Virus record (IMG/VR): IMGVR_UViG_3300048571_000088
Location: 1 to 64,000 of that record
Direction: 5' to 3' (one strand)
Length of the DNA: 64,000 nt
Part shown: one piece after another, positions 29,814 through 44,549 of the stretch
Position numbering within the stretch: position 1 is the stretch's first letter
Layout of the letters: each line of letters opens with the position of its first letter
The notes under the pieces: model-generated
Database searches by the model: none
The model's input: only the letters and a program-made list of their open reading frames with translations
What the model was told of the DNA's origin: nothing
Made by a program: the position numbers and the translations under genes

Positions 29814-29898
29814 TCCTTCCTCTCGGACTCGAACCGAGACTGCCTTTCGGCGCAGGTTTATGAAACCTGTGGATTTAAACCAATTCTCCCAAGGAAGG
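29814..29898 (-). tRNA. tRNA with CAU anticodon (Met/Ile2) and long variable arm
   Basis: CCUUCCU/AGGAAGG-A, CAGGU-UUCAUAA-ACCUG, extra arm GCC-GAAA-GGC, canonical T arm. Confidence 0.85.
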
Positions 29899-30596
29899 AA
29901 TAAAAATAATTATTTAATAACAATAAATCATAGAACCACTATTTCAATATTGTTATTACAGGTTAATTGGAACCTCCAGTTTTTAATTAACTTCATCATA
30001 ATCTTGGTACTGCAACCAACGGTAGGTGCTAATTAAAGCTTCTTACATTCGTAGCCTACTTCCGAACTACTACCCAAGTGGCTAATTGGGAGGTCATGAT
30101 TTTAATTTAAAATATTTTATAAATCTTCTTTTTTAACTACTTTAAAATGATCTTCATCGTATAATTGATTTTTATAATTAATTTCATTCTGTATTTTAGT
30201 CTCTTTCGTATGGTCTGTCATAAGCCTATTATACAAATAAATGGCACTTGGCTTATCATATTTTAAAAATGACTTAGACATATTTCTACTCCAAGAATAA
30301 GATAAAGTCCAAAAATCTACATAACCATAATCAATATAACGTCCAAGGTAAGCAACTGAATAAAATTCCCCTCTATTAATAATAGTTGGAATTTTTGGAT
30401 CAATATTTTGTAATTCTTGCGGTATAAAGTTTTCTTTTTTATCGGAATACTTTTTTACTGCCAGTAATATCAGAAATAAAACAAGAATGAGGAAAGCTAA
30501 AGTACACATTATTTTAATCCTTGCATAAAAGTTTAAGAAGTAAAGAATAGTATTGGATTGTTCGGTACATGTTAATAATCTTTGAACTACTTTTAA

Positions 30597-30717
30597 CAGA
30601 TTAGTATTTTTATCAAGTGGATTCGAACCACTGCCTTTTTTGAGTCAACAAAAACGCTCTAACCTCTAAGCTATGTTCCCTAATGGCGGGAAAGTTTAAA
30701 TTTGCTGTTACTAATCT
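30597..30717 (-). ncRNA. ACAGCAA module RNA, open form enclosing tRNA D, anticodon and T arms (copy D)
   Basis: UAA-AGAUUAGUA-ACAGCAA ... UAGCUUAGAGGUUAGAGC ... AGUGG-UUCGAAU-CCACU ... UACUAAUCU-G; no acceptor stem or CCA. Confidence 0.8.
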
Positions 30718-30723
30718 TTAATG

Positions 30724-31296
30724 TTATTTAATAGAGTTTGCACTAACAAACATATAAATAATATTCATTTCTAGTTCATCAATCAGATTATGAGCTTGGT
30801 TGATTAGCCTGTATTTAATTACTTCTCTGACTTCCATAAGAACAGAACCTAAAAAATTAAGTCCATTCCATTGGTTTGAATCTAAAATTAAAGGATCATC
30901 TGCGGAAAGACCTACACCCCAAATACAATCTACAGGGGATGCCTCTACAAGAAATAAACCATCAGTATCTGACAGTTTTTTTGTTAAATCTTTGTCAGTA
31001 GTAAATTTAAGATAATTTACTTCGTACATTATTTGATAACTTACTTTAGACCATTCTGTGTCTGAATAATTCTTTACGTTTCTTCCTAGTCTTTTAGCAG
31101 TATAAGGATCTTCTGCCTCGTGAATCAATCTCATACTTTCTGTATCTTTAAAGAATTCAGCTTTACGGTACATAAACATATGTTCTGTAGTATAGAAAGT
31201 TAATCCGTTATAGATAATTCCTTTAGGAATATCATGAAAATTACTAAGAAAATTTGTTAAGAAGTAATAATGAGTATCTGTTTTTAAATTATTCAT
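30724..31296 (-). CDS. NADAR (YbiA-like) family protein
   Basis: FLSNFH, TTEHMFMYRKA, AKRLGR, LVEASPVDCIWGVG and GLNFLGSVLMEVRE. Confidence 0.92.
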   Translation of the reverse strand: MNNLKTDTHYYFLTNFLSNFHDIPKGIIYNGLTFYTTEHMFMYRKAEFFKDTESMRLIHEAEDPYTAKRLGRNVKNYSDTEWSKVSYQIMYEVNYLKFTTDKDLTKKLSDTDGLFLVEASPVDCIWGVGLSADDPLILDSNQWNGLNFLGSVLMEVREVIKYRLINQAHNLIDELEMNIIYMFVSANSIK

Positions 31297-31996
31297 TTTC
31301 TGTTTCTAGAATTAAGTTATTAGTTGCTTGATTAAAATTATAAAGTAGACGATCTAAACCAAAAGCAATCTCCAGTACAAAATGATCAGAAGAAAAATCA
31401 GTTCGTTTTGAAACAGAGCAAACTTCCATCCATTTGTCACCATTGTTTACTTCAATATCTAAAGTATTTAAGGAATAAGAAGGTAATCTATCACTAGTAA
31501 CAATACGAGTTGGTAGTTTTAATAGTTCAAGTACTAGATTACCTAAGTCTTTAATAACATTTTCTTGATATTCATTTTTCGTACTAATTGAATAAATACA
31601 TTGAAATTCAAGTTGAAAAAACTCTTTAAATCGACAATGTTTTGTTGCTTGGTCTTGTTCTTTACGGAAAGACTTTGAAGCTTGAAAAACACACAAAGGT
31701 GGTTTGTGACTTAAAGTTAATAATTGGTTTGCATACGCATAGCTTAAAGCAGTTGTTTCTGGCTTTAAAGATAATGTATCTGAAATTTTAAAATAATCAG
31801 ACTCTGAATACTCAGGGTTAATTTGATCATTACTAATCAAACAACTCCCTTCAATCTCATGAAAACCCCAAGCTTTATTTTGACTACGTAAGATGTTTTT
31901 AACACCTAAAGTAATAAATTGTTTGATAAAGTTTCGAATTAAAATATCTTTTTCATTGTAAGCAACAATGCCATTAGTATTTGTCAAACTAAGCAC
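31289..31996 (-). CDS. Truncated class II aminoacyl-tRNA synthetase catalytic domain (GlyRS-like)
   Basis: LKPETT, motif 2 KSFRKE...RFKEFFQLEFQ, YS..TLDIE, WMEVCSVSKRTD, motif 3 LEIAFGLDRL; the protein ends shortly after motif 3. Confidence 0.8.
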   Translation of the reverse strand: MLSLTNTNGIVAYNEKDILIRNFIKQFITLGVKNILRSQNKAWGFHEIEGSCLISNDQINPEYSESDYFKISDTLSLKPETTALSYAYANQLLTLSHKPPLCVFQASKSFRKEQDQATKHCRFKEFFQLEFQCIYSISTKNEYQENVIKDLGNLVLELLKLPTRIVTSDRLPSYSLNTLDIEVNNGDKWMEVCSVSKRTDFSSDHFVLEIAFGLDRLLYNFNQATNNLILETENE

Positions 31997-32550
31997 GGTA
32001 AGTCCTTTAATTGTTTATCTATTTTACATAGTTCTTGTAATAACAGTGCAACTTTGTTTTGTAAAGTATCAATTTGTTTTTCAGTTGTATTATATTTAGA
32101 AACTAAATATTCACAATACTCTTTTAAAACTTCAACACTGTCTTGATCTCCGTACAAATAACTTTTAATTGTATTTGGGTCGAAATAATGTGCTGTTACT
32201 TCAGATAACACACCTGTTTTGTAATCTATCTCGTAAGTAGGAATACTAATTAACGGTTTATAAAAGTCTGTTAGATCTTTTAAAATCTGAATGTGTGCTT
32301 CTGGTGTGGTGTTGTACTCATCTAGTATGATAATCCTACTAAGTGGATTAGTGTCAGACGAAAGATCAATATCTTTTGTCATTGAAACAGGTACAATACC
32401 TAATTCTTTTAATCGTGTTGAATACAAATTTAAATATTTTTGTAATTCTAGAACAAATTTACTTAAGAGTTTCTGGTCGGTGTATTTTAAATAAATTTTA
32501 TGTTTTTGTTTGTATTTGTACATATAGAATCTCAAATAAAAATAATAAAC

Positions 32551-42976: not shown

Positions 42977-43246
42977 TCAATTTTTTGCTTCATAAGTGAT
43001 CCCGTCAATTACGACACTAGTTTGTGAAGGGTTTTTACCGACCTTATAATAAGTTGTTGTAGTGCTGACTGGACAACGTATAACTACTATTGAATTATAA
43101 GAATTACTTACTTTTTTAGCAATACAATCTTTAAACATAGGGTCACTTTCTAAAGAATTTTGATAAGAACTAAATTCCGTATGTGGTTGTGAGCAGCCTA
43201 GAAGTAACGTGGTGATTACGATGGGTATTAAGGTTTTTAAAACCAT
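42977..43246 (-). CDS. Putative lipoprotein
   Basis: Lipobox LLGC after a hydrophobic N-terminus. Confidence 0.6.
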   Translation of the reverse strand: MVLKTLIPIVITTLLLGCSQPHTEFSSYQNSLESDPMFKDCIAKKVSNSYNSIVVIRCPVSTTTTYYKVGKNPSQTSVVIDGITYEAKN

Positions 43247-43772
43247 TATAAATACTCTCTATTAATAAAAGGAGGAATCGCTGTAAAGTGTCCATTTACA
43301 AACACTAGAATAACTTAAAAACGTACCACTTCCATCTGTATAGACTTTTTTATACACAGAAAGATTTTTATAAAAAGCTGACCGATCTTTAGTAAGTTTT
43401 TTAAAAGTTTCTAAATCTAATTTAGTATTATCTGGATTAAGATTAAAACAAATAAATTGAGAAGTATTAGTAAGAATAGCAAGAGAGTTAGCTTCTTCTT
43501 TATAATCATTTTCTTTTAGAAAATTAATAACTTCATCAATCTTTAAATTATGTTTTCTCATTTAGGTACTACAATAGGTACACTTGTAGGAAAGCACATT
43601 AAAGTGCTATTAATACGTTGCTCATAAGCTTGTACACTTGCTAGGCAAGCTTGCCTGGTATTATATTGTGCAATTGGTGTACCACCATGATTAAAATAAA
43701 CTAAATTCCACATGATAATAAATTTAATCATTTTTATTAAAACCTTCTTTTAAAGTATGTGCTTACGGATTG

Positions 43773-43878
43773 TGGCAAGGGCTGGAATCGAACCAACGTT
43801 AAAATACAAATTGTATGAGTTTTAAATTTGCTGTAAGTATTCTTTACAGAATAGCATAACCAACATTTCAACCTTGCC
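43773..43878 (-). ncRNA. tRNA-like RNA with permuted ACAGCAA module (copy I)
   Basis: GGCAAGG/CCUUGCC-A acceptor; GUUGG-UUCGAUU-CCAGC T arm; insert UAUUCU-GUAA-AGAAUA-CUUACAGCAA; D and anticodon arms eroded. Confidence 0.75.
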
Positions 43879-43885
43879 GTAAAAA

Positions 43886-44443
43886 TTAACTCTTTCTATT
43901 TCTAAAAGAAGTTTTTAAATTAAAACCGTGCTGAGTAACTTTACAATCATTTGGAATTTCAGGTAAAGAAACTTCAACATCAATCTTTTGTCTTAGAAGA
44001 TAATTATAAACTTTAGTATAAATATCTTCATAACTAATAAAGTCTGTAAGACCTGTATAAGTAGTTAGCCGTGTATAAGCTTTAATACCGAAGTTACCAG
44101 GAAAAAGACCTAAATTATTACCGAACTCAAAAAATGGAAGTTCTATATGTTTAAAAATCTTCTTGAATTCAGCAGTAATTGGTACTGTTTTGTAGTACAT
44201 ATCATCTCTAAAAATATAAACAGTATCACAAATAAATAAGTACCTATAAGTGAAATAATTCAATGTAGCGACTGACTTTGAATAGTCGCGCCTAGGTACT
44301 GATACGTTAAGTAATTCTGATAAAGTTAAATTACACTCAACATATTGATATTCATAATTTAAGTTAAGAACTATACTATTATCAACACCATAAACATAAG
44401 CTAGTGTTGTAAAGTAATCAGGTTGTTTTGTAATGATTTTCAT
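43886..44443 (-). CDS. Hypothetical phage protein (start corrected to MKIITK)
   Basis: The longer ORF overlaps a tRNA; GAGG precedes the ATG at 44443. Confidence 0.6.
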   Translation of the reverse strand: MKIITKQPDYFTTLAYVYGVDNSIVLNLNYEYQYVECNLTLSELLNVSVPRRDYSKSVATLNYFTYRYLFICDTVYIFRDDMYYKTVPITAEFKKIFKHIELPFFEFGNNLGLFPGNFGIKAYTRLTTYTGLTDFISYEDIYTKVYNYLLRQKIDVEVSLPEIPNDCKVTQHGFNLKTSFRNRKS

Positions 44444-44460
44444 ATGAAAATCCTCTGTGA

Positions 44461-44549
44461 TGGTGGGTGAGGTGGGATTCGAACCCACAATGACTTTCGT
44501 CTTATTTGTTATGAGCAAATCGCACTTCGACCAATATTGCTGCTCACCC
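44461..44549 (-). tRNA. tRNA with CAU anticodon (Ile2/Met) and long variable arm
   Basis: GGGUGAG/CUCACCC-A-CCA, AUUUG-CUCAUAA-CAAAU, extra arm GAC-GAAA-GUC. Confidence 0.88.

What the first reader, a model, noticed from the sequence alone, without database searches (positions are those of the whole stretch)
29814..44549. Two CAU-anticodon tRNAs with class II-type variable arms plus a phage TilS
Seen: both CAU tRNAs (29814-29898, 44461-44549) carry a GAAA-capped extra arm and A73; a minimal TilS lies at 35449..36093. Known: bacterial Met/Ile2 tRNAs have short variable loops, long arms are typical of Leu/Ser/Tyr, and TilS converts CAU to read AUA. Inference: a private AUA-decoding pair suited to an AT-rich genome or evading host tRNases; mischarging with Leu is also conceivable.
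Basis: partly seen in the sequence, partly recalled or inferred. Interest (0 to 1): 0.6.

Follow-up and report, generated by a model that had tools for sequence, protein, structure and literature searches.

The report
Phage AUA-decoding kit: TilS, long-arm tRNAs
A 243-kb freshwater phage carries a stripped-down lysidine synthase and two odd-shaped CAU tRNAs that most likely let it read the isoleucine codon AUA, which crowds its late structural genes but is nearly absent from the genes around the tRNAs.

Summary
Two tRNAs with anticodon CAU (29814-29898 and 44461-44549, minus strand) each have a 3-bp extra arm capped by GAAA and an A73 discriminator. A 214-aa TilS (35449-36093) holds only the catalytic domain.

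The arms are not freaks. tRNA2 belongs to a scaffold ("group I") that is the only tRNA-Ile2 candidate in a Paraburkholderia genome, recurs in related Burkholderiaceae genera, and occurs in many phages. tRNA1 belongs to a rarer scaffold ("group II") with a tRNA-Leu-like D arm. In 9 of 11 loci it lies on the same strand as a ~200-aa phage TilS, in most of them within 23-91 nt.

AUA makes up 44% of Ile codons in the structural block but 11% in the block holding the tRNAs and TilS (p = 2e-81, the strongest contrast of any codon).

Against orthologues in Acinetobacter phage ME3, AUA sites align like AUU/AUC sites and unlike Leu sites. AUA therefore means Ile, and reassignment to Leu is not supported.

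Best reading: a phage-supplied AUA→Ile decoding module, charged by host IleRS. What the extra arm does is still unknown. It does not track TilS phylogeny. Nothing has been tested at the bench. I rate this a new variant of a known kind.

The parts
29814..29898 (-). tRNA1: CAU anticodon, Leu-type D arm (UG-GGA-GAAUUGGU...), 14-nt variable region with a GCC-GAAA-GGC arm, A73, no encoded CCA. Member of 'group II'.
   Evidence: Rfam tRNA 50.3 bits. The group II model R2, built without window sequences, scores it 70.1 bits; the group I model scores it 47.3.
44461..44549 (-). tRNA2: CAU anticodon, D loop AUAUUGGU, 15-nt variable region with a GAC-GAAA-GUC arm, A73 and encoded CCA. Member of 'group I', the Burkholderiaceae-type tRNA-Ile2 scaffold. 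It has C8 where the family has A8, and its arm is shifted by one base.
   Evidence: 46.7 bits. The group I model R1, built without window sequences, scores it 69.6 bits. Alignment A2.
35449..36093 (-). Minimal TilS (tRNA-Ile lysidine synthetase): catalytic PP-loop domain only, 214 aa.
   Evidence: TIGR02432 95.7 bits and PF01171 82 bits. Matches to 1NI5, 1WY5 and 3A2K catalytic domains. No C-terminal TilS domains in the genome. 164 relatives of ~200 aa in viral contigs.
19224..64000 (-). The part of the AUA-poor gene block that lies in the window (the block runs to about 81 kb). It holds all the tRNA genes, TilS, Pnkp, Hen1 and the NAD-salvage genes. ATA is 11% of Ile codons here and zero in most large genes.
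22989..23062 (-). tRNA-Arg(UCU). It reads AGA, the codon with the second-strongest enrichment in the structural block. This is the same supply logic as for AUA.

Best explanation
Both CAU tRNAs are AUA decoders of the tRNA-Ile2 kind.

Proposed mechanism:
- The tRNAs are transcribed from the tRNA-rich minus-strand block.
- C34 is converted to lysidine by the phage's catalytic-domain-only TilS, and possibly by the host enzyme as well.
- The host IleRS charges them with isoleucine.
- They read AUA. That codon makes up about 44% of Ile codons in the structural (presumably late) genes and is almost absent from the genes expressed alongside the tRNAs.

Carrying TilS makes the extra tRNA copies usable even in a host whose own TilS and tRNA-Ile2 are scarce.

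Shown here: the anatomy, family membership, genetic linkage, codon partition, and the Ile meaning of AUA.

Inferred: lysidinylation, charging by IleRS, and the early/late timing.

The extra arm is a selected helix, but its role is unknown. For tRNA2 it is simply the shape of a natural bacterial Ile2 lineage. For tRNA1 it looks inherited from a tRNA-Leu-like body.
For: 1. tRNA2's scaffold is a real tRNA-Ile2. In Paraburkholderia sp. A1BS-2L, the full inventory of 67 tRNA genes has only three kinds of CAU tRNA: initiators (3 variants), one elongator Met, and a single 88-nt group I tRNA. There is no UAU tRNA. The same tRNA is present in about 85 Paraburkholderia, Burkholderia, Ralstonia and Trinickia records.

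2. Phage locus L376 carries an initiator, an elongator Met and a group I tRNA. L400 carries a tandem group I copy with anticodon AAU.

3. tRNA1's scaffold is linked to TilS. Nine of 11 group II loci carry a ~200-aa TilS on the same strand, in most of them 23-91 nt away (345 and about 900 nt in the other two). The two loci without one are contigs of only 1.5-2.3 kb.

4. The mini-TilS plus CAU tRNA cassette is common. There are 164 TilS relatives in IMG/VR, and 31 of 46 tRNA-bearing loci hold a CAU tRNA, typically 20-60 nt from TilS.

5. ATA is 11.0% of Ile codons in the 19-81 kb block and 43.6% in the 114-186 kb structural block (p = 2e-81, the largest contrast of any codon). GC3 is the same in both blocks. 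AGA, read by the phage tRNA-Arg(UCU), comes second.

6. In 84 orthologues shared with phage ME3, ATA sites (n = 567) align to I 0.41, L 0.15, V 0.15. This is indistinguishable from ATT/ATC sites (p = 0.90) and unlike Leu codons (p = 2e-66).

7. The genome is complete by CheckV and holds no class I synthetase.

8. Precedents from the literature: one CAU tRNA of a T4-like vibriophage carries k2C34 (review PMC13191261), and bacteria that rarely use AUA have weak TilS enzymes (PMC12514573).
Against: - There is no RNA, modification or aminoacylation data. No RNA run holds the phage.
- TilS is 5.5 and 8.4 kb from the two tRNAs here, not adjacent.
- Most phages with group I tRNAs carry no TilS (0 of 27 loci; 2-3 of 14 contigs). 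TilS is therefore not required for that scaffold.
- tRNA1 has a tRNA-Leu-type D arm, A15/U48 and A73. These are the elements that E. coli LeuRS reads (textbook knowledge), so some Leu charging is possible.
- tRNA2 departs from its family at position 8 (C instead of the invariant A).
- Minor IleRS elements known from E. coli (U12-A23, C29-G41, C4-G69) are absent from both tRNAs.
- The major head and tail sheath genes avoid AUA (0 of 27 and 2 of 48 Ile codons). The partition therefore also follows expression level, not timing alone.
- The host is unknown.
Confidence: 0.68

Rival explanations
1. tRNA1 (group II) keeps leucine identity or has a dual Ile/Leu identity. It would be a tRNA-Leu body whose anticodon became CAU (one base away from CAA), so that LeuRS charges it and AUA (after lysidine) or AUG is read partly as Leu.
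For: The group II D arm matches the bacterial tRNA-Leu pattern UGGNGGAAUUGGU. One member (L409) also has a Leu-like acceptor stem and lies next to tRNA-Leu(GAG). A73 and A15/U48 are present. LeuRS ignores the anticodon (textbook knowledge). Nematode nev-tRNAs are a precedent: class II tRNAs with Ile or Gly anticodons charged with Leu (PMC3333845).
Against: ATA sites are not shifted toward Leu in orthologues: L is 0.153 at ATA sites and 0.169 at ATT sites. ATA is not enriched where ME3 has Leu. The tight linkage to TilS points to a lysidine-dependent role, and L34 is the main IleRS determinant. The group II anticodon arm (GU-CUCAUAA-AC) is the same as in ordinary TilS-adjacent Ile2-like tRNAs. 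L172/L403 share their acceptor stem and T arm with such ordinary tRNAs.
Confidence: 0.12
2. One or both are ordinary elongator methionine tRNAs reading AUG, and TilS serves host tRNA-Ile2 or something else.
For: ARAGORN labels them Met. Unmodified CAU tRNAs are MetRS substrates. Many phages with group I tRNAs lack TilS.
Against: Phages and bacteria that hold group I tRNAs already have a distinct elongator Met. The codon partition concerns ATA, not ATG. The other phage tRNAs target A/U-ending rare codons such as AGA and AAA. Group II is linked to TilS.
Confidence: 0.07
3. The extra arm is an escape device. It would make the phage's AUA decoders poor substrates for host tRNA-cutting defence nucleases while they still work in translation. 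This concerns the role of the arm and is compatible with the best explanation.
For: The same block encodes Pnkp (46255-48627) and Hen1 (48617-49888), the RNA healing/sealing and 2'-O-methylation pair, together with NAD-salvage and NADAR genes. Many other tRNA-like genes here are structurally odd. Extra arms also occur on phage initiator-like and UAU tRNAs. Published work shows phage tRNAs evading anticodon nucleases (PMC10264068, PMC11555353).
Against: No nuclease aimed at tRNA-Ile2 is known to me. The same arm is chromosomal in Burkholderiaceae, where no such pressure is evident. Known escape changes lie in the anticodon loop, not the variable region.
Confidence: 0.15
4. The extra arm is the handle by which a TilS lacking its tRNA-discriminating C-terminal domains picks its substrate out from tRNA-Met.
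For: The mini-TilS lacks the domains that read the acceptor stem in E. coli TilS. Group II is tightly linked to TilS.
Against: Most mini-TilS genes sit next to normal-length CAU tRNAs. On the TilS tree, enzymes beside long-arm tRNAs are scattered (at least 3 origins) and are sisters of enzymes beside normal tRNAs. A close TilS relative (73% identity) has a normal 77-nt CAU tRNA nearby.
Confidence: 0.05

Closest known systems
Chromosomal tRNA-Ile2 of Burkholderiaceae (Paraburkholderia, Burkholderia, Ralstonia, Trinickia)
   Same: Same scaffold as tRNA2: about 88 nt, 3-bp D stem, D loop xUAUUGGU/GUGYUGGU, 15-nt variable region with a 3-bp GNRA-capped arm, A73-CCA, anticodon CAU. The model built from this family scores tRNA2 at 69.6 bits.
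   Different: tRNA2 has C8 instead of A8 and an AU-rich acceptor and anticodon stem. Its arm is shifted by one base, and it sits in a phage of 33% GC.
Phage tRNA(CAU) read as Ile2 (T4 tRNA-Ile; the k2C34-bearing tRNA of a T4-like vibriophage, as cited in PMC13191261)
   Same: A phage-encoded CAU tRNA supplies AUA decoding for an AT-rich phage. Codons read by phage tRNAs are concentrated in late genes (for T4 this rests on my own knowledge).
   Different: Those tRNAs are of normal shape and rely on the host TilS. Here there are two long-arm forms plus a phage TilS, and a much sharper AUA partition.
Phage TilS of Pseudomonas jumbo phages MIJ3/PA5oct (PMC6892783)
   Same: A TilS of about 200 aa with the catalytic domain only, in a jumbo phage that has several CAU tRNAs (29% identity).
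   Different: Their CAU tRNAs are 73-77 nt. Function there is untested. No AUA partition has been reported.
Type II TilS (Aquifex aeolicus, 1WY5)
   Same: A shortened TilS that does not read the acceptor stem. The catalytic domain is homologous.
   Different: It still has one C-terminal domain (317 aa). The phage enzyme has none.
Nematode nev-tRNAs (PMC3333845)
   Same: A class II (long-arm) body combined with an Ile-family anticodon. This resembles tRNA1's Leu-like body.
   Different: nev-tRNAs are charged with Leu and are eukaryotic. Here the proteome reads AUA as Ile and the tRNA is linked to TilS.
bldA tRNA-Leu(UAA)/TTA control in Streptomyces, and stop-codon recoding in crAss-like and Lak phages
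   Same: A codon that is rare or avoided in one gene class and depends on a dedicated tRNA could gate a later gene class.
   Different: Those cases are shown experimentally or involve stop codons. Here the gating by AUA is only inferred from codon counts.

Membership tests
tRNA (Rfam RF00005) | Cloverleaf scoring above the 29-bit gathering score | tested here: met
   tRNA2 scores 46.7 bits and tRNA1 50.3 bits. ARAGORN finds both.
tRNA-Ile2 (lysidine-dependent AUA decoder) | Genomic anticodon CAU without initiator marks (1-72 mismatch, three G-C pairs in the anticodon stem) | tested here: met
   C1-G72 and G1-C72 are paired. The anticodon stems are CAGGU/ACCUG and AUUUG/CAAAU.
tRNA-Ile2 (lysidine-dependent AUA decoder) | Distinct from the elongator Met of the same system (slot-filling) | tested here: met
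   This holds for the scaffolds, not for this phage itself. Group I coexists with an initiator and an elongator Met in L376 and in Paraburkholderia. Group II lies beside TilS. The window phage has no other CAU tRNA.
tRNA-Ile2 (lysidine-dependent AUA decoder) | k2C34 present and charged with Ile | not testable with these tools
   No RNA runs are available. This needs tRNA mass spectrometry or charging assays.
tRNA-Ile2 (lysidine-dependent AUA decoder) | AUA in the genome means Ile | tested here: met
   The ATA profile matches ATT/ATC (p = 0.90) and differs from Leu codons (p = 2e-66) across 84 ME3 orthologues.
Class II tRNA (Leu/Ser/Tyr type) | Base-paired extra arm and a variable region longer than 10 nt | tested here: met
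   The variable region is 14-15 nt with a 3-bp helix. Covariation supports all 3 of 3 pairs in the family alignment.
Class II tRNA (Leu/Ser/Tyr type) | Anticodon of Leu, Ser or Tyr | tested here: not met
   Both anticodons are CAU.
tRNA-Leu identity (E. coli rules) | A73, A15-U48, G18G19 in a GAAUUGGU D loop; the anticodon is not read | tested here: inconclusive
   tRNA1 shows all of these sequence marks. tRNA2 lacks the Leu-type D loop. Charging was not tested. The codon test argues against Leu as the meaning of AUA.
TilS (TIGR02432 / PF01171) | PP-loop ATP-pyrophosphatase domain with SGGxDS, scoring above the equivalog-domain cut-off | tested here: met
   95.7 bits against a cut-off of 93.6. 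The motifs are seen in the alignment to 1NI5 and 1WY5.
TilS (full-length type I/II) | C-terminal tRNA-binding domain(s) (PF09179, PF11734) | tested here: not met
   Absent from the ORF and from the whole genome. The full-length model NF007942 scores 62 bits against a cut-off of 606.
Group I long-arm CAU tRNA (Burkholderiaceae/phage) | A8 with U14, D loop UAUUGGU, 3-bp GNRA-capped arm, ACCA | tested here: inconclusive
   tRNA2 gets 69.6 bits with R1 and shares the D loop, arm, T arm and ACCA. It has C8 instead of A8, and its arm register is shifted by 1.
Group II long-arm CAU tRNA (TilS-linked) | U8G9, Leu-type D arm, GU-YUCAUAA-AC anticodon arm, short tetraloop-capped arm, T loop UUCRAGU | tested here: met
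   tRNA1 has every feature and scores 70.1 bits with R2. The linkage to TilS is looser here, at 5.5 kb.

The most novel reading that the evidence does not exclude
AUA acts as a translational gate. Genes expressed before the phage's own lysidine-tRNA supply builds up are kept free of AUA. Most structural and assembly genes are loaded with it (up to 85% of Ile codons), so their translation waits for the phage TilS and the two long-arm tRNAs. This would be a sense-codon analogue of stop-codon recoding in crAss-like and Lak phages, or of bldA/TTA control. A second strand of the same reading: the TilS-linked group II tRNA is a tRNA-Leu body converted to Ile identity by a single modified base, which would be a natural identity switch.
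Probability: 0.2. Interest if true: 0.75.

Novelty: new variant of a known kind. Interest (0 to 1): 0.55.

Why it matters
Phage tRNAs for AUA and phage TilS genes have each been noted before. Here they form a coherent, quantifiable system, for three reasons.

1. The enzyme is reduced to its catalytic core. This raises the question of how it avoids modifying Met tRNAs.

2. The two substrate candidates have non-standard shapes. One shape is shared with a whole bacterial family. The other is built on a leucine-tRNA body and travels with mini-TilS in other phages. That makes it a natural test case for how far a single modified base (lysidine) can override the rest of a tRNA's identity set.

3. The codon partition between gene blocks is one of the sharpest I know of for a sense codon. 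It gives a direct, testable prediction about timing of, or capacity for, late-protein synthesis in hosts that barely use AUA.

The result also warns annotators that 84-90-nt 'tRNA-Met' calls in phages and in Burkholderiaceae are likely Ile2.

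Tried and rejected
- Near-identity DNA search of the region against the phage collection found nothing.
- A single-protein TilS scan of IMG/VR found nothing. The alignment-based scan worked.
- The pattern TATTGGT-N13-15-CTCATAA was too loose. Its hits were mostly chance matches and it was replaced.
- (401 genomes) used a mis-specified pattern that did not even hit its own control genome. No inference is drawn from it.
- The pattern had the wrong spacing.
- The CAU tRNAs of MIJ3 and two 630-640-kb phages carrying TilS are of normal length. The arm is therefore not a general companion of phage TilS.
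- Phage ME3, the nearest named relative, has no TilS and a normal CAU tRNA.
- Whole-contig search found TilS in only 3 of 43 contigs bearing long-arm CAU tRNAs, and in none of about 29 with initiator-like ones.
- The arm as a TilS handle is disfavoured by the tree (this was the quick tree, because the careful search did not finish).
- The class II synthetase-core ORF 31289-31996 as a private charging enzyme: its relatives in three other phages are not next to CAU tRNAs, so it was dropped.
- The ORF overlapping the TilS 3' end (35085-35474) as a detached TilS C-domain: no Pfam or NCBIfam match.
- Literature searches found no paper describing long-arm CAU tRNAs in phages. The supplement of PMC12514573 does not print the B. 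cenocepacia tRNA-Ile2 sequence, so I could not confirm from text that it is the group I form.
- Sequencing runs were DNA only.
- No alternative genetic code was needed. Table 11 gives 87% coding.

Full report
**Setting.** The window is the first 64 kb of a single 242,588-bp phage contig. It is 33% GC and CheckV rates it 100% complete. It reads well under the standard code: 286 non-overlapping ORFs cover 87% of the sequence. The nearest named phage is the Acinetobacter jumbo phage vB_AbaM_ME3, with about 53% amino-acid identity in the large terminase and the major head protein. Near-identical DNA occurs in 24 freshwater metagenome runs. None of these is an RNA run. All tRNA genes of the genome lie in the window, on the minus strand.

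**Observation.**
- ARAGORN calls two CAT-anticodon tRNAs at 29813-29898 and 44461-44549.
- The Rfam tRNA model gives tRNA2 46.7 bits.
- It gives tRNA1 50.3 bits when the region is searched alone. The whole-window scan had filtered tRNA1 out.
- Both have standard acceptor, anticodon and T arms, a 3-bp D stem with G18G19, an unpaired A73, and a 14-15-nt variable region that folds into a 3-bp helix closed by GAAA.
- tRNA2 encodes CCA. tRNA1 does not.
- Neither has initiator marks.
- The ORF 35449-36093 is a TilS catalytic domain and nothing more. No TilS C-terminal domain and no class I synthetase is encoded anywhere in the genome.

**Long-arm CAU tRNAs are widespread.**
It yielded 49 ARAGORN-confirmed CAU tRNAs of 80 nt or more.
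- These fall into three kinds:
  - Group I, the tRNA2 type: A8/U14, D loop UAUUGGU, 15-nt variable region, encoded ACCA.
  - Group II, the tRNA1 type: U8G9, a D arm like bacterial tRNA-Leu, anticodon arm GU-YUCAUAA-AC, T loop UUCRAGU.
  - Initiator-like tRNAs carrying an extra arm.
- A second scan that did not require GAAA gave 27 distinct group I sequences. Of these, 22 have GAAA and one has GACA.
- In the 31-row alignment A2, every helix covaries. The extra arm shows all four Watson-Crick pair types at two of its three positions, and 0 of 500 shuffles reach the observed score.
- Covariance models built without the window sequences place tRNA2 in group I (69.6 bits, against 47.3 for tRNA1). 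They place tRNA1 in group II (70.1 bits, against 59.3 for tRNA2).

**Group I is a tRNA-Ile2.**
- I inventoried all 67 tRNA genes of Paraburkholderia sp. A1BS-2L. The only CAU tRNAs are three initiator variants, one elongator Met, and the single 88-nt group I tRNA. There is no UAU tRNA.
- Unless AUA is unreadable there, group I is that organism's tRNA-Ile2.
- Phage locus L376 likewise carries an initiator, an elongator Met and a group I tRNA. L400 carries a tandem group I duplicate with anticodon AAU.
- The premise that Ile2 tRNAs always have short variable loops is therefore wrong for at least one bacterial family.
- A 2025 paper shows B. cenocepacia tRNA-Ile2 being lysidinylated by its own TilS and by E. 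coli TilS, with G3:C70 and the D loop as determinants (PMC12514573). I could not confirm from the text that its sequence is the group I form.

**Group II travels with mini-TilS.**
- Scans for the group II signature found 2 viral and 9 metagenomic loci. They represent about seven lineages.
- Nine of the eleven loci carry a ~200-aa TilS on the same strand. In most of them it ends or starts 23-91 nt from the tRNA; the distance is 345 nt in L407 and about 900 nt in L403.
- The two loci without TilS are contigs of 1.5-2.3 kb.
- One member (L172/L403) shares its acceptor stem and T arm with ordinary-length CAU tRNAs that sit next to the sister TilS genes.

**The TilS cassette in general.**
- Starting from TilS instead, 164 relatives occur in IMG/VR, all 150-250 aa.
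- Among the 80 loci fetched, 31 hold a CAU tRNA. Usually it is of normal length, Ile2-like in its acceptor stem, and 20-60 nt from TilS.
- A mini-TilS plus CAU-tRNA cassette is thus common. The long arm is an occasional variant of it.
- On a TilS tree, enzymes beside long-arm tRNAs are scattered (at least three origins) and are sisters of enzymes beside normal tRNAs (quick tree).
- Closer relatives of the window's TilS (53-91% identity) lie in syntenic contexts, with a DUF2828 or TROVE gene, NADAR and NAMPT.
- One of them has a normal 77-nt CAU tRNA nearby. Another has a 102-nt long-arm tRNA-like gene with loop CUUAUAA (anticodon UAU) 7 nt after TilS.
- Different AUA readers are evidently swapped in this phage group.

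**Codon evidence.**
- AUA is used at 18.8 per 1000 codons overall, but very unevenly.
- In the minus-strand block from 19 to 81 kb, ATA is 11.0% of Ile codons and zero in most large genes. Examples are 0 of 52 in Pnkp and 0 of 36 in TelA. This block holds the tRNAs, TilS, Pnkp, Hen1, NAMPT, NMNAT-Nudix, NADAR and TelA.
- In the plus-strand structural block from 114 to 186 kb, ATA is 43.6% of Ile codons. Examples are terminase 0.43, portal 0.55, and up to 0.85 in one gene.
- Fisher p = 2e-81, the largest contrast of all codons. AGA comes next (25% against 56%, p = 7e-26) and is read by the phage tRNA-Arg(UCU). CUA comes third.
- GC3 is the same in both blocks. This argues for selection rather than foreign origin.
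- Within the structural block, the major head protein (0 of 27) and the tail sheath (2 of 48), together with two neighbouring genes of unidentified function, avoid AUA. AUA therefore remains a costly codon for the most abundant proteins.
- ME3 shows the same trend more weakly.
- That the AUA-poor block is 'early' is my inference from its gene content.

**What AUA means.**
- I aligned 84 ORFs to ME3 by tblastn and tabulated the ME3 residue opposite each codon.
- ATA (n = 567) gives I 0.409, L 0.153, V 0.153, M 0.034.
- ATT gives I 0.415, L 0.169, V 0.157.
- Leu codons give L 0.438, I 0.134.
- ATA against ATT/ATC: p = 0.90. ATA against Leu codons: p = 2e-66.
- ATG behaves as Met.
- AUA is therefore Ile at the level of the proteome. 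Wholesale Leu decoding is excluded. A minor Leu fraction from tRNA1, whose body carries the marks E. coli LeuRS reads (A73, A15/U48, a GAAUUGGU D loop), cannot be excluded, because Ile-to-Leu changes are mild.

**Mechanism proposed.**
- The phage supplies both the tRNAs and the modifying enzyme for AUA. Charging falls to the host IleRS.
- Bringing TilS makes sense if the host's TilS is limiting. Bacteria that rarely use AUA have the weakest TilS enzymes (PMC12514573).
- A phage CAU tRNA carrying k2C34 has been observed in a vibriophage (PMC13191261).
- Phage TilS itself was first noted in MIJ3/PA5oct, without a function (PMC6892783).
- What the arm does is unresolved. For tRNA2 it may be no more than the native shape of a host-lineage Ile2. 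This hints, speculatively, at a betaproteobacterial host or donor.
- For tRNA1 the arm looks like the legacy of a tRNA-Leu ancestor. CAA to CAU is one substitution.
- A role in evading tRNA-cutting defences is plausible given the Pnkp/Hen1 genes next door, but it is untested.

**Verdict.** The AUA-decoding interpretation is supported by several independent lines of comparative evidence. The Leu-mischarging and private-pair ideas are weakened. Nothing has been tested at the bench. I rate it a new variant of a known kind and of moderate interest. A more novel reading, AUA as a gate for late genes and group II as a natural Leu-to-Ile identity switch, remains open.

Noticed in passing
window 26442-26563, 27836-27958, 40585-40712, 43770-43878 (minus strand): Four tRNA-like genes carry a related 45-60-nt insertion in or beside the anticodon arm. 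The inserts share a hairpin around (C/U)UGUAAAR followed by AACAGCA. The pattern has 4 hits, all inside these genes, against 0.12 expected. The inserts are too short for group I introns. With Pnkp and Hen1 nearby, protein-dependent cutting and re-joining is conceivable. 43770-43878 resembles the TilS-adjacent long tRNA-like gene of L603.
   Followed up: partly
window 46255-48627 and 48617-49888 (minus strand): Pnkp (kinase-phosphatase-ligase, 790 aa) and Hen1 (RNA 3'-end 2'-O-methyltransferase, 423 aa). This is the bacterial RNA repair pair, encoded by a phage next to its tRNA genes. Both are almost free of AUA.
   Followed up: partly
window 31289-31996 (minus strand): A stand-alone class II aminoacyl-tRNA-synthetase core of 235 aa (GlyRS-like motif 2, no anticodon-binding domain). 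It belongs to a family of more than 400 proteins of 230-260 aa in metagenomes and large phage contigs. It is not linked to CAU tRNAs in three relatives.
   Followed up: partly
window 37731-37844 and 36191-37663 (minus strand); L603:4431-4533, L601:12432-13895: A tRNA-like element with a ~35-nt extra arm and loop CUAAAAA sits just upstream of a DUF2828/DUF7788 gene. This arrangement is conserved in relatives, and in one relative the gene in a similar neighbourhood is a TROVE (Ro60-like) protein. It may be a Y-RNA-like partner RNA.
   Followed up: partly
window 54604-56013, 56016-57059, 30724-31296, 33924-35075 (minus strand): NAMPT, an NMNAT-Nudix fusion, a NADAR domain protein and TelA. This is an NAD-salvage and ADP-ribose-related set of the kind linked to counter-defence, and all are AUA-free or nearly so.
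   Followed up: no
window 62595-62668, 30614-30675, 25487-25566, 23350-23424 (minus strand): Further unusual or partial tRNA-like sequences: one with anticodon AAA, one with an 8-nt anticodon loop, and two weak matches.
   Followed up: no
L373:10039-10129, L379:12833-12927, L386:1238-1329, L391:4036-4130; L400:3810-3897: In other phages, 91-95-nt tRNAs with anticodon UAU and long arms (loops containing AGAUA) lie near group I CAU tRNAs. In L400, a group I copy with anticodon AAU follows the CAU copy by 19 nt.
   Followed up: partly
many IMG/VR loci, e.g. L036, L087, L091, L074, L099: Initiator-like phage tRNAs (1-72 mismatch, G-C-rich anticodon stem) that also carry a GNRA-capped extra arm. 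Several Asn(GUU) tRNAs longer than 80 nt occur in the same loci. Extra arms on class I isotypes seem to recur in phages.
   Followed up: no
ME3 record NC_041884: 167348-167421, 139267-139365: The related phage ME3 encodes a CUA-anticodon (amber suppressor-like) tRNA and a 99-nt tRNA-Leu(UAG).
   Followed up: no
G000 100-112 kb (e.g. 108179-111613): A stretch with GC3 of about 0.5, against about 0.2 in the rest of the genome, holds a 1143-aa ORF with no Pfam match. It may be recently acquired DNA.
   Followed up: no
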